Below are positions 1,614 to 22,905 of a stretch of DNA of 64,000 bases, one piece after another. Under the pieces are notes generated by a model. That model was given only the letters and a program-made list of their open reading frames with translations, was not told where the DNA came from and did no database searches. A program made the position numbers and the translations under genes. The DNA is taken from the sequence record MW879344.1; one strand, given 5' to 3'. Every line of letters starts with the position of its first letter. The first letter of the stretch is position 1.

Positions 1614-1729
1614 GCAGTGATCGTCTAGAGGCTTAGGACACGAAAAAGCGATTCTTGGTTAAGAATCTTACGGCATCAATAAACTTTCATTTCACGAACG
1701 TAACGCAGGTTCGAATCCTGCTCACTGCA
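1614..1729 (+). tRNA. tRNA-Glu(TTC) interrupted by a 43-nt insert (1643-1685) in the anticodon stem
   Basis: Acceptor GCAGTGA/TCACTGC, T-arm GCAGG-TTCGAAT-CCTGC; removing 1643-1685 restores CG|TTC/GAACG stem around TTC (1691-1693). Confidence 0.8.
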
Positions 1730-2059: not shown

Positions 2060-2185
2060 GTGGGGTTAGCTCAGTCTGGTAGAGCAGCGAAAGAAAAAAC
2101 AATGGAATCTTGAAAAGGATTCTAACAGCATTATATCTTCTACTGTAAATTCGCAGGTCGGTGAGTTCGAATCCACCATCCCACA
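2060..2185 (+). tRNA. tRNA-Tyr(GTA)-like, short variable loop, interrupted by ~51-nt insert (~2092-2142)
   Basis: Acceptor GTGGGGT/ATCCCAC, D-stem GCTC/GAGC, GCGAA/TTCGC stem and CT-GTA-AA loop after removing insert. Confidence 0.75.
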
Positions 2186-2533: not shown

Positions 2534-2899
2534 ATGAAAGTATTCATTGATGATATTCGTGACCCAAAAAATTACTTGACACCAGAACAGGCTGATGGTA
2601 TTATTTGGATCAAAGAGTGGTGGTCAGCAAAACGCTTTTTGATTGATCATGCTGCTGAAATTGAAGTGATTCATTTTGACCATTACATGGATGAACCAAC
2701 GTTAACTGGTAAAGATTTATTCTTTATGGTTGCTGGGGATTGTATGTGGGGTGGAAAAGAAACATGGATTAAACTACAGAAAATTTATTTACATTCTTCT
2801 GATGTTGATATGGTTGAAGAACTTGTTGAAGAATATAGTACTGAATTGGCTGAAGCTGGTGTTGAGCTTATTGATAACCATCAAGAAAGGAACTACTAA
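2534..2899 (+). CDS. cyclic-phosphate processing receiver-like domain protein
   Basis: MKVFIDDIRDP...IHFDHY...GKD...IYLHSSD matches the LDDxRxP / DHD / HS pattern. Confidence 0.7.
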   Translation: MKVFIDDIRDPKNYLTPEQADGIIWIKEWWSAKRFLIDHAAEIEVIHFDHYMDEPTLTGKDLFFMVAGDCMWGGKETWIKLQKIYLHSSDVDMVEELVEEYSTELAEAGVELIDNHQERNY

Positions 2900-3256
2900 A
2901 TGAAAGTTTATGTAGATGATATTCGTAATCCACAAAACCATCTAAGTTCTGAACAGGCAGCCGATGTAGTATGGATTAAAGAATGGTGGGATGCACGTAA
3001 CTTTATCTTTTATAATAATTTAGAAATTGAAGTGATTCATTTAGATAATTATCTAGGTGACCGTACCCACACTGGGGCTGATTTACTTCAAATGATTACA
3101 TATAGGTTTCGCCGTGGGGAATTCCCTAAGTTGAAACAAATTTATCTTCACAGTTCTGATAAAGATATTGTGAATAAACTGTATGACAAACATATTGAAC
3201 GTTGTACAGAAGCTGGTGTTGAATTAATTAAAAATTCACGTCCAAACCGTAGTTAA
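2900..3256 (+). CDS. cyclic-phosphate processing receiver-like domain protein (tandem paralog)
   Basis: MKVYVDDIRNP...IHLDNYLG...GAD...IYLHSSD; clear paralog of 2534-2899. Confidence 0.7.
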   Translation: MKVYVDDIRNPQNHLSSEQAADVVWIKEWWDARNFIFYNNLEIEVIHLDNYLGDRTHTGADLLQMITYRFRRGEFPKLKQIYLHSSDKDIVNKLYDKHIERCTEAGVELIKNSRPNRS

Positions 3257-3262
3257 ACAAAT

Positions 3263-3384
3263 GGCGAGTTAGCTCAGTTGGTAGAGCAGGAAAAAAACCG
3301 ATTCTTGTATTGAATCGTACAGCAAACAATACTATTGCACTTTTAATGCCCTTGTCGGGGGTTCAATTCCCTCACTCGCCACCA
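3263..3384 (+). tRNA. tRNA-Lys(TTT) interrupted by a 46-nt insert (3291-3336) in the anticodon stem
   Basis: Acceptor GGCGAGT/ACTCGCC+ACCA; removing 3291-3336 gives GG|GCA-CT-TTT-AA-TGCCC. Confidence 0.85.
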
Positions 3385-3444: not shown

Positions 3445-4056
3445 ATGAATATATGTTTACAATGTAATCAAGAAATTGATGATAAGAAAAAGTTTTGTAA
3501 TAAATCTTGTGCGGCAAAGTACAATAATTCTCATAGAATATTGTCGGAAGAAACAAAATCTAAAATTTCTAAATCTTTAAAAGATCGAGAAGCTAAATTT
3601 ATTGAAACTGAAAATGTTAAGGCTGGTAGACTTCGAGCAGGTGCAAAACGTAGTGAATATGCGATTGGAAAATTATTATCTGATGATTTTGAATCATTAA
3701 GTGTTATAAGAAAGAAAAAACGTGTAAAAATGGAACAAGATAATAAATGTTTAATATGTGATTTATCTGAATGGCGTGGTTCTTTATTAACATTGGAAGT
3801 AGATCATATAGATGGAAATAACATGAATAATAGTAGAGATAATTTAAGAGCTTTATGTCCTAATTGTCATTCACAAACTGAAACGTGGCGTGGGAAAAAT
3901 AGTAAAAAAGTTATTTCAGATGAACTTTTAATTGAGATTATTTCAGTTTCTTCATCTATTGCAGAAGTTATTCGAAATACCAATATGTCTAAATCAAAAA
4001 CTTCGTATAATAAAATCCGTGCTATTATGGAAATGAATAAACTATCATTTAACTAA
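3445..4056 (+). CDS. HNH homing endonuclease with N-terminal Zn-binding motif
   Basis: LEVDHIDGNNMNN...NLRALCPNCHSQT; CxxC...FCNKSC. Confidence 0.9.
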   Translation: MNICLQCNQEIDDKKKFCNKSCAAKYNNSHRILSEETKSKISKSLKDREAKFIETENVKAGRLRAGAKRSEYAIGKLLSDDFESLSVIRKKKRVKMEQDNKCLICDLSEWRGSLLTLEVDHIDGNNMNNSRDNLRALCPNCHSQTETWRGKNSKKVISDELLIEIISVSSSIAEVIRNTNMSKSKTSYNKIRAIMEMNKLSFN

Positions 4057-5833: not shown

Positions 5834-6076
5834 ATGAAAAGTGCAACTACTTTAAAGAACATGCATACTCGCATTGAGTTACTTAAATCACAACGTGATT
5901 TAGCATGGATTGAATGGCATAAGTTAAATGATTTGGAACAGCGTAACAAAGAGCAAGGTAAAGCATTGTCTCAAACTTTCGCCCTTATCACTAAACTGAC
6001 ATATGAAATTCGCGGTCTGCAAATCACCTTTGGTGAACTGAAAGAACAAGTCATCAAAGAAATCATTTTGTCTTAA
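5834..6076 (+). CDS. hypothetical coiled-coil protein
   Basis: ORF with heptad-like pattern. Confidence 0.75.
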   Translation: MKSATTLKNMHTRIELLKSQRDLAWIEWHKLNDLEQRNKEQGKALSQTFALITKLTYEIRGLQITFGELKEQVIKEIILS

Positions 6077-7723: not shown

Positions 7724-7840
7724 GGAATCTTACAGCAAAAATACTAATTTTTGATGAAAACGAAACGACGAGGTTCGAATCCTCACCCACGAATTGCCTT
7801 ATTATTAGTGGGAGCACGGTGCTGGATAAACAAAGATTCC
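7724..7840 (+). ncRNA. module-clamped, permuted tRNA-like RNA (degenerate)
   Basis: GGAATC-TTACAGCAA...GAGG-TTCGAAT-CCTC-ACCCAC...GTGGG...AAACAAA-GATTCC. Confidence 0.65.
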
Positions 7841-7861
7841 AGAATTTAAGTTAGAAAATTA

Positions 7862-7890
7862 TGAAACAAATCAAAAATTTGTGGTATAAT
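7862..7890 (+). promoter_or_regulatory. TGAAAC-N17-TATAAT promoter class
   Basis: TGAAAC 7862-7867, TGG-TATAAT ending 7890. Confidence 0.7.
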
Positions 7891-7902
7891 ATAAGAAGTA
7901 AA

Positions 7903-8010
7903 GCGGGATGGTGATTGATGAAAGCTATTATTTGATTCTAGAAAATCATAATAAGCGAGTAAGAGAACAGGGTTCTTAATATCACGAGGGTTCGATCCCC
8001 TGTCGCTGCA
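7903..8010 (+). ncRNA. tRNA-like RNA with elongated central arm
   Basis: T-arm AGGG-TTCGATC-CCCT, imperfect acceptor GCGGGAT/GTCGCTGC, long central hairpin. Confidence 0.45.
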
Positions 8011-8023
8011 CAAAGCAACAAAC

Positions 8024-8141
8024 GAAATCTCACAGCAAACAAAACAATTTTTTTCCTTGCATAGAAAAACGGTGGGGTTCGATTCCCCAACATCCAAGTT
8101 GCTTTTAGGATGTGTCTGGAAGGCCGTATGACAAAGATTTC
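8024..8141 (+). ncRNA. module-clamped, permuted tRNA-like RNA (degenerate)
   Basis: GAAATCT-CACAGCAA...TGGGG-TTCGATT-CCCCA-ACATCC...GGATGT...ACAA-AGATTTC. Confidence 0.65.
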
Positions 8142-8317
8142 AGTTCCTATCAACTAAAAAGGATAGCATATAATGAGTTCTGAAGAAAATTTAGAATTAT
8201 TAAATAAAATAATGAATGCCATTGCAAATGGTAAGTTGAATGAAACAATGACTGAACTTGGTTACGAAGTAACTAAGAGTACTGATAAAAGTACAGAATG
8301 GTCATTAAAACAATAAT

Positions 8318-8391
8318 GTTCTGTTAGACAAATTGGTAAAGTCACCACCCTTTCAAGGTGGGGTTTACGGGTTCGACCCCCGTACAGAACG
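8318..8391 (+). tRNA. tRNA-Glu(TTC), uninterrupted
   Basis: GTTCTGT/ACAGAAC, CCACC-CT-TTC-AA-GGTGG; no encoded CCA. Confidence 0.92.
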
Positions 8392-8396
8392 CTAAA

Positions 8397-8506
8397 GGAT
8401 TCGCACAGCAACAATAAAATCTTAAAATTCAATTGGTGAAAACAACCTTGCAGTTCGATTCTGCTTCCACAATGCGTGGATCTGGTCGATAGAAAAAACC
8501 GAATCC
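8397..8506 (+). ncRNA. module-clamped, permuted tRNA-like RNA (degenerate)
   Basis: GGATTCG-CACAGCAA...GCAG-TTCGATT-CTGC-TTCCAC...GTGGA...AAAAAAC-CGAATCC. Confidence 0.6.
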
Positions 8507-8545
8507 TGATTTTAATTAAGAAGTACTAAAGAATTTGATACACAC

Positions 8546-8698
8546 GGATTTATACAGCAAACATAATCCTAAAATAAAACATACGATAATGTTACTAACT
8601 CGGAATTCGTTCCCTTCGTTAGTACTTGGCAACTTGGGTACTTAAATAAGTTGTATCACCTCACGTGTATCGGATTAGAGGTGATTATAAATAAATCC
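8546..8698 (+). ncRNA. module-clamped multi-hairpin RNA
   Basis: GGATTTA-TACAGCAA...three hairpins...TAAATCC. Confidence 0.6.
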
Positions 8699-8734
8699 AG
8701 TAACACAAAAGTACCTTGAACGGTACTTTTTTAT

Positions 8735-8827
8735 GGTAGGTTGGCAGAGTTTGGCTTATTGCACTTGTCTTGAAAACAAGCGGGGGTTAACAGCCCTCCG
8801 AGGGTTCAAATCCCTCACCTACCTCCA
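8735..8827 (+). tRNA. tRNA-Ser(TGA)
   Basis: GGTAGGT/ACCTACC, CTTGT-CT-TGA-AA-ACAAG, long variable arm, CCA. Confidence 0.93.
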
Positions 8828-8838
8828 ATACAATAAAG

Positions 8839-9156
8839 GTGAACATGATGGATTCAGTTGGTTTAATCGTTGTGTTTTTAGAACAACGTGTTCGTGGTTC
8901 TAATGAAATGCATTATGTAGTACAAGTTACTGAAGAAGGAACTTGTGACGTTCATGTTACTGACTCATGGAGTTTTAAGTCATGGGAAGATTTAAAAGAA
9001 ACGCATCCTACTTTCAAAAGTTTGTTATATGAATTTTTTAATTCTTGCAATTGGGCACCTTATGTAAACGAAAAAGAAATTTGGGCTGATGAAGTAATCG
9101 GCGGCGAAGGTCTTTATGATGATGATGATTCACATGTATTAAGTACTGATTTGTAA
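8839..9156 (+). CDS. hypothetical acidic protein
   Basis: ORF with AAGG SD; start codon among GTG/ATG uncertain. Confidence 0.75.
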   Translation: MNMMDSVGLIVVFLEQRVRGSNEMHYVVQVTEEGTCDVHVTDSWSFKSWEDLKETHPTFKSLLYEFFNSCNWAPYVNEKEIWADEVIGGEGLYDDDDSHVLSTDL

Positions 9157-9164
9157 AGTTCAAT

Positions 9165-9239
9165 GGGGTACGTAGCTCAGTCTGGTAGAGCAGCCATGCG
9201 AAAACGGTGTGTCGGTGGTTCGAATCCACTCGCTCCCCA
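9165..9239 (+). pseudogene. degenerate tRNA (Phe-like T-arm, anticodon unresolved)
   Basis: Intact D-arm and GGTGG-TTCGAAT-CCACT; mismatched acceptor and anticodon stems. Confidence 0.6.
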
Positions 9240-9243
9240 CTAA

Positions 9244-9300
9244 GGAATCTAGCAGCAACCATAACCCAATCAAACTTTTAATTTGACAATTATGGATTCC
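9244..9300 (+). ncRNA. module RNA carrying an isolated Lys(TTT)-type anticodon stem-loop
   Basis: GGAATC-TAGCAGCAA...TCAAA-CTTTTAA-TTTGA...GATTCC. Confidence 0.7.
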
Positions 9301-9478
9301 CGTTATTTTTAAGGATGTGATATGTCTAAAGAACAAGATGAATTTGAAAAAGAATATCTTATAAGTAAGCGTATTGATCCAAAAGCAACATTTTATATAA
9401 AATCTCGTAGAAAGAAAAATGGTTATAGAACTCGTGAATTGAATAATAAATTTCAAGAATTTCTTAAACGATTTAAAG

Positions 9479-9570
9479 GGTAAAGTGGCAGAGCGGCTGA
9501 ATGCAACCGCTTGGAAAGCGGTCAGGTTAGGTAATCCCTAGCCTCGTAGGTTCAAATCCTATCTTTACCG
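9479..9570 (+). tRNA. tRNA-Ser(GGA)
   Basis: GGTAAAG/CTTTACC, ACCGC-TT-GGA-AA-GCGGT, long variable arm, G73. Confidence 0.92.
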
Positions 9571-9622
9571 CAAAGTAATAACTCCTTATTAAAGTGAAGT
9601 ACAAAAACAATAGGAGAATATT

Positions 9623-9979
9623 ATGTACGAGAAAGATGATGGTCCATTAACTGATGAACAAATTCGTATCATCCGTGAAATGAATAGCCATCTGAATCAA
9701 ACTGATTTAGAAATTGATTTAAATTGGTTGAACAGTGATATACAAGGAAATGCAATGTATTACGACTATTATTACAAAGTTGACGGTGATCTTCGTCGTT
9801 ATACCAGTAATCAAGAGTTAACGGATGCGGAAATCAATAATATTTTTGGTGCAAGCAAACAAGTAGTAATGCTTACTCCAATTGTATTTGAACGTGACGT
9901 AACTACTGAAGACAAATCTGGTAAAAAGATTAAAAGTACTGAAAAAGTACATGTTGGCTTCTTAGGATATGTGGAATAA
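9623..9979 (+). CDS. hypothetical protein
   Basis: ORF with AGGAG SD. Confidence 0.75.
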   Translation: MYEKDDGPLTDEQIRIIREMNSHLNQTDLEIDLNWLNSDIQGNAMYYDYYYKVDGDLRRYTSNQELTDAEINNIFGASKQVVMLTPIVFERDVTTEDKSGKKIKSTEKVHVGFLGYVE

Positions 9980-9981
9980 AA

Positions 9982-10668
9982 ATGTCAAAAAAGACTGATA
10001 AAGAAGTAAAAGATACAAAAGAAAAGTACACTGTTGTTAAACACGGTTCACTAACACTAGTGAATACACCAACAGTAAAAACTTTCTATATGAATGGTTC
10101 TATTGATCATCCTACATTAACTAAGTTCCAAAAGTTCTTAGAAGATACATGTACGGAAAATAATAAAATTGATACCGAAGAAACTGAACGCAAAGAAAAG
10201 GATGAATTTAAAAAGATTCATGATCCTGAATCTAAGCCAGAGTTTGTTCCTGCTAAACGTAAAGTTGAGCGTATCAATCTGGTTATCAATAGTGGTGGTG
10301 GTTTAGTTGCAGTAATGCTAGAAGTTGTAGCACTAATGAAAACTTCACCAATTCCAATTGATACCTACTGTTTTGGTTCTGCAATGAGTGCAGCTTTCTT
10401 TATCTTCTTACATGGCAAACGCCGTTTTGTTGGTGAAGGTGCCTCATTTATGACACATAGCATTGGTGCTATGGCATGGGATAATGTACCAAACATGACA
10501 ATTCGTATGGAGTACTTGGTTAAACAAAACGAGTACGCACAACAGGAAATTGCTAAACGTACTGGAATTCCTCTTGAAAAATTAAAAGAGAAAGAACATC
10601 TCGATTGGTACTTGACTGCTGAAGAAGCGTTAGATGTTAAAATCGGTGAATATTTGATCCGAGATTAA
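9982..10668 (+). CDS. clpP: ClpP-family protease subunit
   Basis: INSGGG, GSAMSAA (catalytic Ser), FMTHS (catalytic His). Confidence 0.88.
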   Translation: MSKKTDKEVKDTKEKYTVVKHGSLTLVNTPTVKTFYMNGSIDHPTLTKFQKFLEDTCTENNKIDTEETERKEKDEFKKIHDPESKPEFVPAKRKVERINLVINSGGGLVAVMLEVVALMKTSPIPIDTYCFGSAMSAAFFIFLHGKRRFVGEGASFMTHSIGAMAWDNVPNMTIRMEYLVKQNEYAQQEIAKRTGIPLEKLKEKEHLDWYLTAEEALDVKIGEYLIRD

Positions 10669-10714
10669 ATATAAATTCTGGATTCGAAAGAATCCTTTTT
10701 TAAGTGAGATGATT

Positions 10715-10939
10715 ATGGACAATCAACACAAACATATTAAAGGGTATCGTGACCTTTCACAAAAAGAAGTGGATGCGATGAATGAGATTAAACAACTGGC
10801 TGCCATCGTTGGAGAGTTGATAGAAAAACTTGAAAGTACTGAATCAGTAGATAAACGTTGGCTTGCAATTGCAAAGACGGATTTACAAAAAGGATTCATG
10901 TCAGCAGTACGAAGTGTGGCTAAACCAGATTCCTTCTAA
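10715..10939 (+). CDS. acb2: anti-CBASS protein Acb2 (cyclic nucleotide sponge)
   Basis: MDNQHKHIKGYRDLS...RWLAIAKTDLQKGFM...PDSF closely matches the Acb2 family. Confidence 0.9.
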   Translation: MDNQHKHIKGYRDLSQKEVDAMNEIKQLAAIVGELIEKLESTESVDKRWLAIAKTDLQKGFMSAVRSVAKPDSF

Positions 10940-10948
10940 GGAACAAAG

Positions 10949-11329
10949 ATGTATACAACGGTTAATCATGCTGATATAATTGATGATATTATAACTGAAA
11001 TACTTGAAATTTATACATGTCGAGTTGAAATTTATAAAGATGGTCATTTATTCACTCAGTACGGGTATAATACTAAACATAATGTGAATTATCATATAAA
11101 TGTAAAGTACTATAATGATAATCCAAGTAATGGTGATAAAGCGAATAGCTTAATGGTAGAATTTAAATTTACCAATAGAGTTCCGAAGGGACTGAAAAAT
11201 CATTACAAGTTATCTATACCTGAAATAACAAGTCTTACAGAAGAACGGCATTTTCAATTAATGTTTGTCACTGATGATATGTATTTGGATTATGAAGTTA
11301 TAAATAAATTACGTACACATATTGTGTAA
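10949..11329 (+). CDS. hypothetical protein, EExxFQ paralog family
   Basis: C-terminal TEERHFQL motif. Confidence 0.75.
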   Translation: MYTTVNHADIIDDIITEILEIYTCRVEIYKDGHLFTQYGYNTKHNVNYHINVKYYNDNPSNGDKANSLMVEFKFTNRVPKGLKNHYKLSIPEITSLTEERHFQLMFVTDDMYLDYEVINKLRTHIV

Positions 11330-11341
11330 AAAAAAAGTTTT

Positions 11342-11393
11342 AGAATCTAACAGCAATCAAAACTCATTGGATATATGAAAAAAGATAGATTCT
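11342..11393 (+). ncRNA. minimal module RNA
   Basis: AGAATCT-AACAGCAA...TCAT-loop-ATGA-AAAAAGAT-AGATTCT. Confidence 0.65.
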
Positions 11394-11400
11394 AGTATTT

Positions 11401-11473
11401 GGGAATATAATTCAGTTGGTAGAATGCTCGACCGATAATCGAGTCGCCGCTGGTTCGAGTCCAGCTATTCCCA
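11401..11473 (+). tRNA. tRNA-Ile(GAT)
   Basis: GGGAATA/TATTCCC, CTCGA-CC-GAT-AA-TCGAG (C33). Confidence 0.9.
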
Positions 11474-11573
11474 CGAAGTAGTTCAGTACTGAAAAATGTA
11501 CAGTGAAATTATTCAACACTATAGGTAGCACTTTGAATGAATCAGTAAGCCTATAAGTAACTACAATAAATTT

Positions 11574-11700
11574 GGAATTCAACAGCAATTCACTTACTAA
11601 AAACAGCTACCTCACGGTTTGTAGGTTCAAGTCCTACCTTGTACTTTCGAGTACATGTGGTGAAAATGGTAAACACGGCTGTCCAAAAGAAATGAATTCC
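11574..11700 (+). tRNA. circularly permuted tRNA gene, Leu(TAA)-like
   Basis: 3' half 11596-11644, T-TTCG-A linker, 5' half 11651-11682; GCTGT/ACAGC anticodon stem; flanked by GGAATTC/GAATTCC. Confidence 0.75.
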
Positions 11701-11753
11701 AGTATTAATTAAGACATAAATATTCTTATACACTTTTTTGTAAGGATATAATT

Positions 11754-12353
11754 ATGGAAATGAAAAAGTTGATGGAAGATATTTCTGCCATCATGGAAGG
11801 ACAATTACCTGGTTATTATTATCATGGAAGTTCTGCCCCAATATCAAATTTTAGTGATGAGTTTGTTGGTAGAGGAAATGATGAATACGGTCCGGGAATA
11901 TATTTTAGTTCAGTTCCAAATACTTCTATAGGTTATGCAAAAGATGGCGGTTCTAATGGAATGGTATATCAGTGCGAAATCAATTTAAGAAAAGAACTAT
12001 CTAAAAAAACTAGAGTTAATAAAGCAGTACTATTAAAATTAATGCAAAATACACCTGATGAAGATGCATATACTAACTGGAATGAAAATAAAAATGTTGC
12101 TTATAGAACAGCATTACAGGGTTATGTAGATGAAGGTAATATGTATGATGCGTTAATGGGTGTTTGGTACGATTGGTATAGAGAATATCCTGTTCAATTC
12201 GTGCGTTCACTAGTACAGTTAGGATATGATGGATACATATATACTTTTGCAAGCGGTGAACGTTTTATTATAGTATATAATCCAGCAAGTATAAAAGTTG
12301 TAAACACATTCAATCCAGAAGAAGCTATGCAGAAACTGATTGGAAGTGAATAA
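11754..12353 (+). CDS. ADP-ribosyltransferase-fold protein (ART-PolyVal-like), possibly virion-packaged
   Basis: YYHGS, GPGIYFS, YA, late E motifs; ATAAATA at 11716-11722. Confidence 0.6.
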   Translation: MEMKKLMEDISAIMEGQLPGYYYHGSSAPISNFSDEFVGRGNDEYGPGIYFSSVPNTSIGYAKDGGSNGMVYQCEINLRKELSKKTRVNKAVLLKLMQNTPDEDAYTNWNENKNVAYRTALQGYVDEGNMYDALMGVWYDWYREYPVQFVRSLVQLGYDGYIYTFASGERFIIVYNPASIKVVNTFNPEEAMQKLIGSE

Positions 12354-12361
12354 TAAGATTT

Positions 12362-12479
12362 GGAATTCAACAGCAAATCATTCTAAACCCGTAGCATGTC
12401 GTAGGTTCAAGTCCTACCAGTACTTTCGAGTACTGTAGCTCAGTTGGTAGAGCAGCCACCTTAAAAAGAAATGAATTCC
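12362..12479 (+). tRNA. circularly permuted tRNA-like gene, anticodon unresolved
   Basis: T-arm and CAGTACT, TTCG, AGTACTG and D-arm GCTC/GAGC; flanked by GGAATTC/GAATTCC. Confidence 0.7.
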
Positions 12480-12511
12480 AGTATTAATTAAAACAACATG
12501 AGTATAAATCA

Positions 12512-12961
12512 ATGTCTGATAAGCATCAATTTAAAGTAAACATCGGTGATTGGTCACAAGATGGTCATAATCAATATGATGTTTTAGTTCTTAACAGTAC
12601 TAAACCAGTAGATGAAGTACAAAAAGCATTTAAAAAAGCTGCAACTGATTTACATTTACTAGTAAATGGTCGTTTTCTAATTGCAGATGAATTTGAAGAT
12701 TGTAGTCTATCTGAAGACCATGCAGAAGTTCTTAAAAATGCAGGTGTAAAATTTGATGATTTAGTGTATAATGATGGCGATGATGAAGAACCAAATTATA
12801 TTATTGAAGGTTCAAGTGATATGACTATCCTTGTGATGCGGATCGCCCAACTTGAATTGGACTTTGAATTTGAAATTACGAATGATGCAATTCCGAACTT
12901 TAACGGGTTCTGGACAGAAGAACAAATGCCATCAATCGGATATGGTTTGTATAACATATAA
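12512..12961 (+). CDS. hypothetical acidic protein
   Basis: ORF. Confidence 0.8.
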   Translation: MSDKHQFKVNIGDWSQDGHNQYDVLVLNSTKPVDEVQKAFKKAATDLHLLVNGRFLIADEFEDCSLSEDHAEVLKNAGVKFDDLVYNDGDDEEPNYIIEGSSDMTILVMRIAQLELDFEFEITNDAIPNFNGFWTEEQMPSIGYGLYNI

Positions 12962-12971
12962 AACAAGTTTT

Positions 12972-13034
12972 GGAATCTAGCAGCACCCATAAAATGAAAT
13001 CAACTGTTAATTGAAAAATTCAAAAATGGATTCC
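12972..13034 (+). ncRNA. module RNA carrying an isolated Asn(GTT)-type anticodon stem-loop
   Basis: GGAATC-TAGCAGCA...TCAA-CTGTTAA-TTGA...GATTCC. Confidence 0.7.
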
Positions 13035-13054
13035 AGCCTATTTCGGAGTAAAAA

Positions 13055-13324
13055 ATGTATTATGCTCGATTAGAATATCCAAACAATGGATATGAGATTG
13101 AAAGAATACGTCTTAAAGCCTTAGATCGCAAAAAGTACTACCCAGTAGTTTCGATTGATATTGGTAGTTCAAGTACTCGCATATATCTTGAAGGTGATAA
13201 GAATGCATATAATAGTGTGAACTTTGAATTCTATACCAAACATGGTGATGAATATATTCTTGAAGATATTTTCGAAGACCCTGATTTAAATCCGTACTTG
13301 GATGATGATGATGAAGAATATTAA
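13055..13324 (+). CDS. hypothetical protein
   Basis: ORF with GGAG SD. Confidence 0.8.
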   Translation: MYYARLEYPNNGYEIERIRLKALDRKKYYPVVSIDIGSSSTRIYLEGDKNAYNSVNFEFYTKHGDEYILEDIFEDPDLNPYLDDDDEEY

Positions 13325-13392
13325 ATAAAAATACCACAAATAAATGAAACGCTTCAAAAAATTGTGGTATAATATAAGTAAGTTAAACAAGA

Positions 13393-13464
13393 GGTTATGT
13401 CGTATAAAGGTTATTACGGAGAGCTGTTAACTCTTTTATCTTGGTTCGATTCCAAGCATGACCG
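13393..13464 (+). tRNA. tRNA-Asn(GTT)
   Basis: GGTTATG/CATGACC, GAGAG-CT-GTT-AA-CTCTT. Confidence 0.9.
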
Positions 13465-13581
13465 CAAAAAGTTAAATTCACCAGGCGTACTATGGTGGGA
13501 AAGGTATCATGATACCAATTCGAATAGAATACGTATTAAACCCTTGAACGGTTTTCTGTAAACTCAATTTAACAAATAATT

Positions 13582-13636
13582 AAGAATCTAACAGCAATCA
13601 AAACTCATTCGATTATATGAAAAAAGATAGATTCTT
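13582..13636 (+). ncRNA. minimal module RNA
   Basis: Near-copy of 11342-11393. Confidence 0.65.
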
Positions 13637-13641
13637 GTTTT

Positions 13642-13714
13642 AGGAGTATGGTGTAATTGGTTAGCACACGTGACTTTGACTCACGTAGTTGAGGTTCGAG
13701 TCCTTATATTCCTG
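13642..13714 (+). tRNA. tRNA-Gln(TTG)
   Basis: AGGAGTA/TATTCCT, CGTGA-CT-TTG-AC-TCACG. Confidence 0.9.
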
Positions 13715-13865
13715 CAAATTAAAATTTCATTCATTTCCTTGTGTGAAACAAGCTGGTATGATTCCCCTTGCTTGTAAAATTATCGAACGGGAACCGCGTT
13801 GCACCTGTACAGGTCAGATTGTAAAGATCGAGTATGTACAGTACTGAGAGCGGCAGTACAATAAA

Positions 13866-13947
13866 GCGGGATTAGCTCAGTGGTAGAGCACTTGCCTTCC
13901 AAGCAAGAGGCGAATAGGTTCCATCGGTTCGAATCCGATATTCCGCT
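13866..13947 (+). tRNA. tRNA-Gly(TCC) with enlarged variable region
   Basis: GCGGGAT/ATTCCGC, U73, CTTGC-CT-TCC-AA-GCAAG, ~15-nt variable region. Confidence 0.85.
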
Positions 13948-14065
13948 CAAACTAAACAAACAATAAGGTGATTTTTATGCTATAGAATCCTAGTACTGGT
14001 CCTCCTAAAGAATTTAATTCTGATATAAACAACTCAAAATTAAACTACTATAGGAAGAACATACC

Positions 14066-14392
14066 ATGTTAAACAAAGAACAATATATTACTGTAAAAAA
14101 TACTTGGAAAGCTGTAAAAGAACATAACATTTTTGATCATGTGATCTATAATGTACTTCGTGGAGTCCCATCTGATACTGGTTTCGCACCAATTACAGAC
14201 AGGGGTCGTTTACACGCTAACAACAATGACCCGTTCAATATGTACAATTACGCAGTTCGTGAAATTCATTATGAATTAAACGAAAAACGGTACAATTACG
14301 AAAAGACAGTAAAGCATTATTCTGAACTATTCGGCATTGAATTTACAAAAGAACTCATCGAAGAAATTGTTTCTTTGATTAAAGTTAAATAA
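14066..14392 (+). CDS. hypothetical protein
   Basis: ORF with AGGA SD. Confidence 0.8.
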   Translation: MLNKEQYITVKNTWKAVKEHNIFDHVIYNVLRGVPSDTGFAPITDRGRLHANNNDPFNMYNYAVREIHYELNEKRYNYEKTVKHYSELFGIEFTKELIEEIVSLIKVK

Positions 14393-14400
14393 CAGAATTA

Positions 14401-14457
14401 AAGAATCCAGCAGCAACTAAAACTCATTCGCTTAATATGAAAAAGAAACGGATTCTT
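14401..14457 (+). ncRNA. minimal module RNA
   Basis: AAGAATCC-AGCAGCAA...TCAT-loop-ATGA...GGATTCTT. Confidence 0.65.
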
Positions 14458-20427: not shown

Positions 20428-20514
20428 GGGTCGTTCACTCAGTTGGTTAGAGTACCGGACTTTTAATCCGGCGGGTATATCCCATCGAAGGTTCGAATCC
20501 TTCACGGCCTACCA
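20428..20514 (+). tRNA. tRNA-Lys(TTT) with long variable arm
   Basis: CCGGA-CT-TTT-AA-TCCGG, GGG-TATAT-CCC variable hairpin, ACCA. Confidence 0.88.
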
Positions 20515-22820: not shown

Positions 22821-22905
22821 GGCATCGTCGCATAGCGGCAATTGCAGGAGACTGTAAATCTCTCGCCTTCGGGCTTCGTTGGTTCGAGTCCAACCGGTGC
22901 CACCA
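22821..22905 (+). tRNA. tRNA-Tyr(GTA), canonical class II
   Basis: GGCATCG/CGGTGCC, CT-GTA-AA, variable arm, ACCA. Confidence 0.95.

What the first reader, a model, noticed from the sequence alone, without database searches (positions are those of the whole stretch)
2060..2185. Interrupted tRNA-Tyr(GTA)-like gene with a class I variable loop
Seen: an insert of about 51 nt (break at 30/31 or 31/32) carries an 8-bp helix with a GAAA tetraloop, then AACAGCA. The helix orientation is swapped relative to the Glu and Lys copies. The variable loop is short (AGGTC), unlike bacterial tRNA-Tyr and the canonical copy at 22821. Established: tRNA-Tyr is a target of colicin E5 and retron Ec78 PtuAB. Inference: a decoy or nuclease-resistant substitute.
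Basis: partly seen in the sequence, partly recalled or inferred. Interest (0 to 1): 0.78.

Follow-up and report, generated by a model that had tools for sequence, protein, structure and literature searches.

The report
tRNA-shaped Y-like RNA of a phage
The "interrupted tRNA-Tyr gene" is real, but its 51-base insert is the same stem-plus-CAGCA module that marks small RNAs encoded beside phage Ro60-like proteins, so it is best read as a tRNA-mimicking Y-like RNA of a phage tRNA-repair or counter-defence system, not as a tRNA with an intron.

Summary
The window is Erwinia jumbo phage pEa_SNUABM_49. Window 2060-2185 (+) folds as a cloverleaf with a GUA anticodon loop, a 5-nt variable loop and a 51-nt insert between positions 31 and 32. 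The gene is not annotated in GenBank.

The insert is not idiosyncratic. Twenty-six copies from Rak2-like phages, KVP40-like vibriophages and a faecal contig align without gaps. They share a 7-bp stem that covaries, a G-NNN tetraloop, and an invariant C-N-G-C-A exactly 10 nt after the loop.

The same module also occurs "opened" and circularly permuted: stem, NNN, CAGCA-A, then the returning stem strand. There are 11 such copies in this window. They also lie directly beside DUF2828 genes in a mycobacteriophage, a Felixounavirus and 56 of 80 viral contigs, with strong strand and position specificity.

A model of the Eneladusvirus DUF2828 protein matches Ro60 structures. Its neighbours in Yersinia phage fHe-Yen9-04 are an RNA ligase, a 2H phosphoesterase and a CCA-adding enzyme.

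After permutation in silico, the Tyr-like element is collinear with YrlA-like Y RNAs.

Verdict: a non-permuted YrlA-type Y RNA that keeps free acceptor ends and an anticodon loop. Splicing is not excluded. I rate it a new variant of a known kind.

The parts
2060..2185 (+). Tyr-like tRNA-shaped Y-like RNA (the finding): tRNA body plus a 51-nt module in the anticodon arm
2092..2142 (+). Insert: A-rich leader 2092-2102, stem 2103-2111, GAAA loop 2112-2115, stem 2116-2124, A2125, invariant CAGCA 2126-2130, tail 2131-2142
   Evidence: gapless alignment A1 and covariation; model R1 38.5 bits
2143..2149 (+). Anticodon-loop sequence CTGTAAA (GTA at 2145-2147). GTAAAT is conserved in the KVP40 homologue although the stems differ
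1614..1729 (+). Sister element with a Glu-like body (loop ATTTCAC) and the module at 28/29; annotated tRNA-Phe(aaa) in GenBank
3263..3384 (+). Sister element, Lys(UUU)-like, module at 28/29, CCA encoded
2534..3256 (+). Two tandem cREC_REC (PF20274) genes, 2534-2899 and 2900-3256, lying between the Tyr-like and Lys-like RNAs. This position is conserved in relatives
   Evidence: 33.7 and 43.7 bits, cut-off 27; PMC7824862
7724..8698 (+). Four open-form modules enclosing circularly permuted tRNA-like domains: 7724-7840, 8024-8141, 8396-8507, 8546-8698
9244..9300 (+). Minimal open-form module displaying a Lys (CTTTTAA) anticodon stem-loop
11340..11395 (+). Minimal open-form module just upstream of tRNA-Ile; near-identical copy at 13581-13637
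11572..11702 (+). YrlA-like RNA: open stem plus CAGCA around a permuted T arm, closed acceptor stem and D arm
12360..12481 (+). YrlA-like RNA; Rfam YrlA 40.5 bits (E 8e-6, below the gathering score of 69) at 12394-12456
12971..13035 (+). Minimal open-form module displaying an Asn (CTGTTAA) anticodon stem-loop
13581..13637 (+). Minimal open-form module just upstream of tRNA-Gln
14401..14457 (+). Minimal open-form module

Best explanation
The element is a tRNA-shaped Y-like RNA: a non-permuted relative of YrlA.

Shown: it has a full tRNA body (acceptor, D and T arms). Its anticodon arm carries the stem/tetraloop/NNN-CAGCA module. In its opened form, that module is the signature of small RNAs encoded next to DUF2828 genes. 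The DUF2828 protein has a Ro60 fold (TROVE ring plus vWA), and this phage encodes one at record positions 101383-102909.

Inferred: the module docks on the phage Ro60-like protein. In known Y RNAs Ro60 reads mainly the conserved 5' strand beside the stem, which is where CNGCA lies. The tRNA body and the displayed Tyr-type anticodon-loop sequence then make the ribonucleoprotein look like tRNA-Tyr to tRNA-recognising factors.

The Ro-like gene of the sister species sits among an RNA ligase, a 2H phosphoesterase and a CCA-adding enzyme, and cREC genes flank the RNA itself. I therefore take the most likely role to be in the contest over tRNA integrity during infection. The RNA would act as bait or decoy for tRNA-specific nucleases, or as an adaptor bringing the Ro-like protein and repair enzymes to damaged tRNA. 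The short variable loop removes the site that Septu and retron-Eco7 nucleases cut.

The RNA probably acts unspliced. [quoted passage not shown]
For: (1) The insert core aligns without gaps in 26 copies from unrelated phage lineages. C, G, C and A are invariant and lie exactly 10 nt after the loop. The stem is 89% paired; 7 of 7 pairs show compensatory changes; 0 of 500 shuffles reach the observed score.

(2) Opened, circularly permuted copies of the same module enclose bare anticodon stem-loops or permuted tRNA-like domains. These cannot be spliced into tRNAs.

(3) Genomic association with DUF2828. Three interrupted tRNAs lie directly upstream of a DUF2828 ORF on faecal contig L006. Three modules follow the Ro-like gene of mycobacteriophage Rumpelstiltskin. 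Four follow that of Felixounavirus AYO145A.

In 80 IMG/VR DUF2828 loci, same-strand modules reach 1.37 per kb in the 500 nt upstream and 0.72 per kb in the 500 nt downstream. The opposite strand and distal bins have about 0.1 per kb. Fifty-six of 80 loci have at least one module within 600 nt; 77 of 89 modules read CAGCA and 81 of 89 are followed by A.

(4) The AlphaFold model of the Eneladusvirus DUF2828 protein (pLDDT 81.6) has Ro60/TROVE structures as its 10 best PDB matches, with E from 8e-9 to 1e-6 and TM about 0.5-0.6 for nine of them (0.38 for D. radiodurans Rsr), over the whole length.

(5) The gene is present in pEa_SNUABM_49 and all relatives and in KVP40-like phages.

(6) RNA-repair neighbours of the Ro-like gene and cREC genes beside the RNA.

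(7) After permutation in silico, the Tyr-like, Lys-like and KVP40/D479 Asn-like elements align end to end with YrlA-like RNAs.

(8) About a quarter of the closed copies have loops unfit for decoding: 8- or 10-nt loops, C33, or a pyrimidine at 37.
Against: No binding or expression data exist.

In this phage the Ro-like gene is about 193 kb from the RNA, not adjacent to it.

Closed (tRNA-embedded) modules are rare next to DUF2828 genes, and none lies near the Yen9-04 gene.

The Rfam YrlA consensus has AAUGCU rather than CAGCA in the corresponding internal loop, and the element scores only 16.3 bits against a gathering score of 69.

Virtual excision gives a perfect 5-bp stem and a 7-nt loop with U33 and A37. 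GUAAA is conserved between very distant phages. Both are also what a spliced, decoding tRNA would show.

Ligase, phosphoesterase and cREC genes would serve a splicing pathway equally well.
Confidence: 0.6

Rival explanations
1. It is a genuine intron-containing tRNA gene. A phage or host endonuclease would excise the 51-nt module, and a phage RNA ligase (with cREC, 2H phosphoesterase and kinase end-healing) would seal the exons. The product would be a class-I-shaped tRNA-Tyr(GUA) lacking the variable arm that Septu and retron-Eco7 nucleases cut. The module might still bind the Ro-like protein as a splicing or chaperone platform.
For: Virtual excision gives a canonical anticodon arm in most copies. 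Acceptor and anticodon stems are kept by compensatory changes, and GUAAA is conserved in KVP40 Pseudo-4. CCA is encoded in the Lys-like copy and in KVP40 Pseudo-4. RNA-end-processing genes lie beside the RNA and the Ro-like gene. [quoted passage not shown]
Against: No bulge-helix-bulge motif by inspection or in the MFE fold. No ribozyme or intron family in Rfam.

Insert position relative to the tRNA (28/29, 29/30, 31/32, 33/34) and leader and tail lengths both vary. Neither a ruler from the tRNA body nor one from the module would define both cuts.

The same module plus anticodon stem-loop exists in unspliceable permuted and minimal forms. Several copies have non-decoding loops. The T stem of this copy has a bulge. 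Bacterial TyrRS normally sees a long variable arm (my own knowledge).
Confidence: 0.22
2. The stem-CNGCA module has nothing to do with the Ro-like protein. It would be a processing, stability or transcription signal of phage tRNA clusters, read by another factor such as an RNase, and it would sit in tRNA-like genes by accident of duplication.
For: Several open-form modules lie just upstream or downstream of canonical tRNAs and near promoter-like sequences. In this genome the modules cluster in the tRNA region, far from the Ro-like gene.
Against: Strand- and position-specific enrichment within 500 nt of DUF2828 genes in 80 independent viral contigs, and in a mycobacteriophage locus with no annotated tRNAs. 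The module is conserved across phages with different transcription programmes.
Confidence: 0.1
3. It is a decaying tRNA pseudogene disrupted by an insertion, as the KVP40 and Yersinia-phage annotations imply ('tRNA-Pseudo').
For: Annotated as pseudo or undetermined in several records. Bulged T stem. Missed by default tRNA finders.
Against: Conserved in two unrelated phage lineages with compensatory stem changes. The insert has invariant nucleotides and fixed geometry. There are multiple paralogues per genome.
Confidence: 0.03

Closest known systems
YrlA / bacterial Y RNA-like RNAs (Rfam RF02553; Chen et al. 2014, PMC4201824; Wang et al. 2018, bioRxiv 10.1101/312249)
   Same: A tRNA-like D/T/acceptor core joined through the anticodon stem to a helix whose conserved 5'-strand nucleotides are the Ro60 site. 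Encoded by phages that carry a Ro60-like gene. After permutation the order of elements is identical.
   Different: YrlA is circularly permuted: its ends lie in the Ro stem and its acceptor is closed. [quoted passage not shown] Here the acceptor is open, the Ro-type stem is closed by a tetraloop, and an anticodon-loop sequence is present. The internal-loop motif is CNGCA rather than the AAUGCU of the Rfam consensus. The Rfam score is far below the gathering score. The gene is not next to the Ro-like gene.
Dictyostelid Class I RNAs (Rfam RF01414; Kjellin et al. 2021, PMC7919456)
   Same: Roughly 60-nt RNAs with a short terminal stem and an 11-nt motif CCUUACAGCAA next to its 5' strand. The near-invariant positions (U3, C6, C9, A10, A11) largely coincide with the module's stem-UUA-CAGCA-A. 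Open-form phage modules have a median length of 59 nt.
   Different: They are eukaryotic, have no tRNA part, and the partner reported in the paper is the RRM protein Rnp1A/CIBP. That paper mentions neither Ro60 nor Y RNAs. The Rfam match is weak (18.9 bits, E 0.46). The resemblance may be convergent.
Archaeal and eukaryal tRNA introns (bulge-helix-bulge, splicing endonuclease)
   Same: A short insert in the anticodon arm of a tRNA gene; virtual excision restores a cloverleaf.
   Different: No bulge-helix-bulge motif. The position is 31/32 rather than 37/38. No splicing endonuclease is known in bacteria or these phages. The insert carries a conserved protein-binding-type module.
Group I introns in bacterial and phage tRNA genes
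   Same: They interrupt the anticodon loop of bacterial-type tRNA genes.
   Different: Group I introns are more than 200 nt with P1-P9 helices. This insert is 51 nt and has no Rfam match.
tmRNA and the TYMV tRNA-like structure
   Same: tRNA mimics with a free acceptor end and an altered anticodon domain that work with a protein partner.
   Different: No sequence or architectural homology. Charging of the present RNA has not been tested.

Membership tests
YrlA-type Y RNA | tRNA-like core (D arm, T arm, 7-bp acceptor-type stem) | tested here: met
   Rfam tRNA 37.5 bits over model positions 1-71; ARAGORN with introns allowed
YrlA-type Y RNA | Helix with conserved 5'-strand nucleotides that serves as the Ro60 site, attached through the anticodon stem | tested here: inconclusive
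   The stem/CNGCA module is the same as in RNAs flanking DUF2828 Ro-like genes. Its motif differs from the Rfam YrlA consensus, and no binding was measured.
YrlA-type Y RNA | Circular permutation: 5' and 3' ends in the Ro stem, acceptor stem closed, no anticodon loop, no free CCA end | tested here: not met
   Acceptor open, Ro-type stem closed by GAAA, loop CTGTAAA present; definition taken
YrlA-type Y RNA | Encoded within about 4 kb of the Ro60 orthologue on the same strand | tested here: not met
   The Ro-like gene is at record 101383-102909 and the RNA at about 296109. The criterion is met for relatives on L006 and L033.
YrlA-type Y RNA | Rfam RF02553 gathering score (69 bits) | tested here: not met
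   16.3 bits for 2027-2115. The window's permuted copy at 12394-12456 reaches 40.5 bits.
YrlA-type Y RNA | Physical binding to a Ro60 or Rsr protein | not testable with these tools
   Needs RIP or EMSA
Ro60/TROVE protein (the proposed partner, DUF2828) | HEAT-repeat ring plus vWA fold | tested here: met
   AlphaFold model, pLDDT 81.6; the top 10 PDB matches are all Ro60/TROVE, E 8e-9 to 1e-6. A sequence search of the PDB found nothing.
Intron-containing tRNA (archaeal/eukaryal type) | Bulge-helix-bulge motif at the exon-intron junctions; canonical 37/38 position | tested here: not met
   Junctions at 31/32. The MFE and centroid folds show no 3-nt bulge / 4-bp helix / 3-nt bulge. Position varies among copies.
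Intron-containing tRNA (archaeal/eukaryal type) | A splicing endonuclease encoded by the phage or host | not tested
   Only parts of the genome were screened
Group I intron in a tRNA gene | Intron of more than 200 nt with a P1-P9 core | tested here: not met
   51 nt; no Rfam intron or ribozyme match at E up to 10
Bacterial tRNA-Tyr | Long (class II) variable arm; GUA anticodon in a 7-nt loop | tested here: not met
   The variable loop is AGGTC (5 nt). GUA sits in a 7-nt loop only after virtual excision. The canonical copy at 22821-22905 has the long arm.

The most novel reading that the evidence does not exclude
The stem-UUA-CAGCA-A module is the general RNA ligand of DUF2828-type Ro60-like proteins. 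The tRNA-embedded versions would then be a new class of Y RNA that keeps a free, CCA-capable and possibly chargeable acceptor end together with a real anticodon loop. Each copy would impersonate one tRNA species (Tyr, Lys, Glu, Asn and others), so that the Ro-like/RNA-repair machinery can bait or repair targets of tRNA-specific defence nucleases. The same protein-RNA pairing may also explain the orphan Class I RNAs of dictyostelids.
Probability: 0.3. Interest if true: 0.85.

Novelty: new variant of a known kind. Interest (0 to 1): 0.7.

Why it matters
Since 2003 these genes have been filed as "pseudo-tRNAs", as tRNAs with wrong anticodons, or not annotated at all, in KVP40-like and Rak2-like phages.

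Reading them as Y-like RNAs does three things. It gives a testable partner, the DUF2828 Ro60-like protein, which is essentially uncharacterised although it occurs in at least 709 phage records. It shows that one phage can carry at least 14 such RNAs. It also extends the YrlA concept to non-permuted forms that keep acceptor ends and anticodon loops. This bears on how phages defend or repair their tRNA supply against anticodon and variable-arm nucleases.

The module also offers a simple search key for Y-like RNAs in viral metagenomes: stem, 1-3 nt, CAGCA-A.

Tried and rejected
Known RNA families: Rfam at permissive thresholds found no ribozyme (pistol, hatchet, twister, hammerhead), intron or riboswitch in the insert.

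Other structural readings considered by eye and dropped:
- Bulge-helix-bulge motif and a leader-tail helix. Only AGAA/TTCT in this copy; not conserved.
- A sigma-70 promoter inside the insert. It scores 9/12, no better than shuffles.
- A -10-like tail, a CRISPR-repeat mimic, an IS200/IS605-type hairpin element, and a K-turn.

T4 stable RNAs rnaC and rnaD, and the T4 tRNA region, have no module.

Genes next to the KVP40 and D479 copies gave no informative Pfam hits.

Model R1 found no closed module near the Yen9-04 Ro-like gene or in the Felixounavirus locus. The open form had to be found with a custom scan. A first, loose hairpin-plus-CNGCA regex was too noisy.

A 7-bp open-form count over the whole window exceeds shuffles on both strands (12 and 10 against 4.0). 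Only the clustering of 10 hits within 7.7-14.5 kb is informative.

The KVP40 genome paper could not be read. Literature searches for phage tRNA introns found nothing relevant. A sequence search of the PDB with the DUF2828 protein found nothing.

Full report
**Source and observation.** The first 8 kb of the window is 100% identical to Erwinia phage pEa_SNUABM_49 (Eneladusvirus BF), a 358-kb Rak2-like jumbo myovirus. The region of the finding carries no annotation in that record.

The sequence reads as a cloverleaf:
- acceptor 2060-2066 pairing with 2178-2184;
- D arm 2069-2085;
- anticodon stem 2087-2091 pairing with 2150-2154;
- 7-nt loop CTGTAAA at 2143-2149;
- 5-nt variable loop AGGTC;
- T arm 2160-2177 with one bulged base;
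- discriminator A2185.

A 51-nt insert (2092-2142) lies between positions 31 and 32. Default ARAGORN misses the gene. With introns allowed it reports tRNA-Tyr(gta) with a 51-nt intron. The Rfam tRNA model gives 37.5 bits in a narrow search. The RNA folds better than shuffles, z = -2.44. The canonical tRNA-Tyr at 22821-22905 has the usual long variable arm.

**A family, not a one-off.** Two sister genes lie at 1614-1729 (Glu-like) and 3263-3384 (Lys-like). Orthologues occur in:
- Yersinia phages fHe-Yen9-03/04, annotated tRNA-Pseudo or Undet;
- Serratia phage BF, CBB, GAP32 and XbC2;
- a human-faecal phage contig;
- unrelated T4-like vibriophages (D479; KVP40's tRNA-Pseudo-3, -4 and -5).

KVP40 Pseudo-4 is the homologue of the Tyr-like gene. 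It has the same D arm and the same GTAAAT, and its acceptor and anticodon stems differ by compensatory changes.

**Anatomy of the insert.** In 26 copies the core aligns without a single gap. It consists of a 7-bp stem, a tetraloop beginning with G, the returning strand, a 3-nt linker and C-N-G-C-A. The four specified bases are invariant and start exactly 10 nt after the loop.

The stem is 89% paired. All seven pairs show double-sided changes. None of 500 shuffles reaches the observed score, and sliding the register drops pairing to 31-46%. An A-rich leader of about 6-13 nt and a tail of about 9-17 nt join the module to the tRNA. The insertion point varies: 28/29 in most copies, 29/30, 31/32 in the Tyr-like gene, and 33/34 in KVP40 Pseudo-4. 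No Rfam family matches the insert.

**Permuted and minimal versions.** GAATC-NNN-CNGCAA occurs 14 times in the window against 2.7 expected. Twelve of these lie on the + strand between 1.6 and 14.5 kb. In context eleven of the sites found there are the same module opened at the loop. The order is: 5' stem strand, 1-3 nt, CAGCA-A, tail, then either a bare anticodon-type stem-loop or a circularly permuted tRNA-like domain, then an A-rich leader and the 3' stem strand.

- Bare stem-loops: CTTTTAA at 9244-9300 and CTGTTAA at 12971-13035.
- Permuted tRNA-like domains (T arm, closed acceptor hairpin, D arm): 7724-7840, 8024-8141, 8396-8507, 8546-8698, 11572-11702 and 12360-12481.

The permuted arrangement is the YrlA architecture. 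Rfam's YrlA model hits 12394-12456 at 40.5 bits (E 8e-6, below the gathering score). None of these forms can be spliced into a tRNA, yet they keep the module and an anticodon-like stem-loop in the same relative order.

**Link to a Ro60-like protein.**
- On the faecal contig, three interrupted tRNAs are followed by a 483-aa ORF with DUF2828, DUF7788 and vWA domains.
- tblastn finds this protein in 709 phage records. They include KVP40-like vibriophages, Rak2-like phages, Felixounaviruses and mycobacteriophages, where it is annotated "Ro-like RNA binding protein".
- pEa_SNUABM_49 has it at record positions 101383-102909.
- Directly downstream of the mycobacteriophage gene lie three open-form modules. 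The middle one is a permuted tRNA-like RNA.
- The Felixounavirus locus has four modules between the Ro-like gene and its tRNA cluster.

In 80 DUF2828 loci from IMG/VR, same-strand open modules reach 1.37 per kb in the 500 nt upstream and 0.72 per kb in the 500 nt downstream of the gene. The opposite strand and distal bins have about 0.1 per kb. Fifty-six of 80 loci have at least one module within 600 nt. Of 89 modules, 77 read CAGCA and 81 are followed by A.

An AlphaFold model of the Eneladusvirus protein (pLDDT 81.6) has Ro60/TROVE structures as its ten best PDB matches over its whole length. These include a Thermus-phage Ro60, Xenopus and human Ro60, and D. radiodurans Rsr.

In Yen9-04 the gene's neighbours are an RNA ligase, a 2H "Swiss-army-knife" phosphoesterase and a CCA-adding enzyme. 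In the window, two cREC_REC genes lie between the Tyr-like and Lys-like RNAs. cREC is a receiver-type domain predicted to process 2',3'-cyclic phosphates (PMC7824862).

**Collinearity with YrlA.** I cut the interrupted tRNAs at the tetraloop and joined their acceptor ends in silico. They then align end to end with the window's own YrlA-like RNAs and with those of the mycobacteriophage and the Felixounavirus.

Published work describes YrlA as a circularly permuted tRNA mimic with a closed acceptor stem, no CCA end and no anticodon loop. Ro60 reads mainly the conserved 5' strand of its stem (PMC4201824; bioRxiv 10.1101/312249). In the present module the conserved bases lie on that side.

**Interpretation.** The best reading is a non-permuted, tRNA-embedded Y-like RNA that docks on the phage Ro60-like protein and mimics tRNA-Tyr.

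Shown here: the structure, the family, the covariation, the genomic association with DUF2828, the Ro60 fold of that protein, and the RNA-repair gene context.

Inferred: binding itself, and the role as a decoy or adaptor in conflicts over tRNA integrity. The short variable loop removes the site cut by Septu and retron-Eco7 (PMC13096335), but whether that matters is not tested.

The main rival is a real, protein-dependent intron, and it remains possible. Excision would give a canonical anticodon arm, and GUAAA is conserved across distant phages. It is weakened by four points: no junction motif, variable insertion points, non-decoding loops in about a quarter of copies, and unspliceable relatives that keep the same parts.

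**Novelty.** Y-like RNAs next to phage Ro60 genes are known (Chen et al. 2014). Within my ten full-text searches, which returned nothing on phage tRNA inserts and did not query this module directly, I found no description of the following:
- the tRNA-embedded, non-permuted form with free acceptor ends and an anticodon loop;
- its presence in Rak2-like and KVP40-like phages, where it is annotated as pseudo-tRNA;
- the CNGCA signature and its fixed geometry;
- the expansion to at least 14 copies in one phage.

I rate it a new variant of a known kind.

Noticed in passing
window 7724-14457 (+): Eleven open-form stem/CAGCA modules lie among the tRNA genes. None falls inside the part of the GenBank record I inspected (the first 8 kb). 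Several sit 5-6 nt upstream of, or immediately after, canonical tRNAs, for example 8396 right after tRNA-Glu and 11340 and 13581 before tRNA-Ile and tRNA-Gln. They may be co-transcribed with those tRNAs.
   Followed up: partly
window 3445-4056 (+) and 3263-3384: An HNH + NUMOD3 endonuclease ORF is present in pEa_SNUABM_49 and _50; the other BF-type genomes cover only about 91-92% of this 8-kb query. The adjacent Lys-like RNA of these two phages is only 81% identical to that of their otherwise 99%-identical relatives. This looks like co-conversion of flanking sequence by a homing endonuclease.
   Followed up: partly
L002 616-729 (Yersinia phage fHe-Yen9-03); L005 about 10640-10760 (XbC2); L009 8753-8876 (KVP40); L033 about 2595-2715: The anticodon-type loop of the Glu-like copy changes between relatives. 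It is ATTTCAC (UUC) in the window, ATTCAAC (UCA, which would read UGA) in Yen9-03, and an 8-nt ATTCATAA in XbC2. The same 8-nt loop recurs in KVP40 and in an unrelated metagenomic contig. The XbC2 copy is unannotated.
   Followed up: partly
Rfam RF01414 consensus against L010 4029-4075: Dictyostelid Class I RNAs (terminal stem plus CCUUACAGCAA, about 60 nt) share the module's signature. The 2021 Genome Research paper reports them as unique to dictyostelids and mentions neither Ro60 nor Y RNAs. I did not check whether dictyostelids encode DUF2828 proteins.
   Followed up: partly
window 9166-9238 (+): A tRNA-like sequence (Rfam tRNA 36.4 bits; missed by ARAGORN) shares the D arm and a T arm similar to the Tyr-like RNA, but has an aberrant anticodon arm and no module. 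It is followed at once by the Lys-ASL module at 9244-9300.
   Followed up: no
window 13866-13948 and 20428-20514 (+): The phage's tRNA-Gly(TCC) (83 nt) and tRNA-Lys(TTT) (87 nt) carry unusually long variable regions, while the Tyr-like RNA has a short one. Variable-arm length seems to be shuffled among this phage's tRNAs.
   Followed up: no
records KU574722 (CBB), MK773491 (7t3), MT939486 (pEa_SNUABM_12): The DUF2828 Ro-like protein is annotated 'structural protein' in several Rak2-like phage records. If that rests on virion proteomics, the protein may be packaged.
   Followed up: no
L010 3966-4015 and L012 about 5884-5979: A second type of small module RNA shares a loop sequence (TTTGCGGATAA followed by an A-rich run) between a mycobacteriophage and an E. 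coli Felixounavirus. This suggests a conserved second Y-like RNA class.
   Followed up: no
L008 4909-5172 (phage T4 rnaC, rnaD): T4's stable RNAs of unknown function lie in its tRNA cluster. rnaC ends in a T arm plus acceptor-like 3' part, but neither RNA has the stem/CNGCA module.
   Followed up: partly
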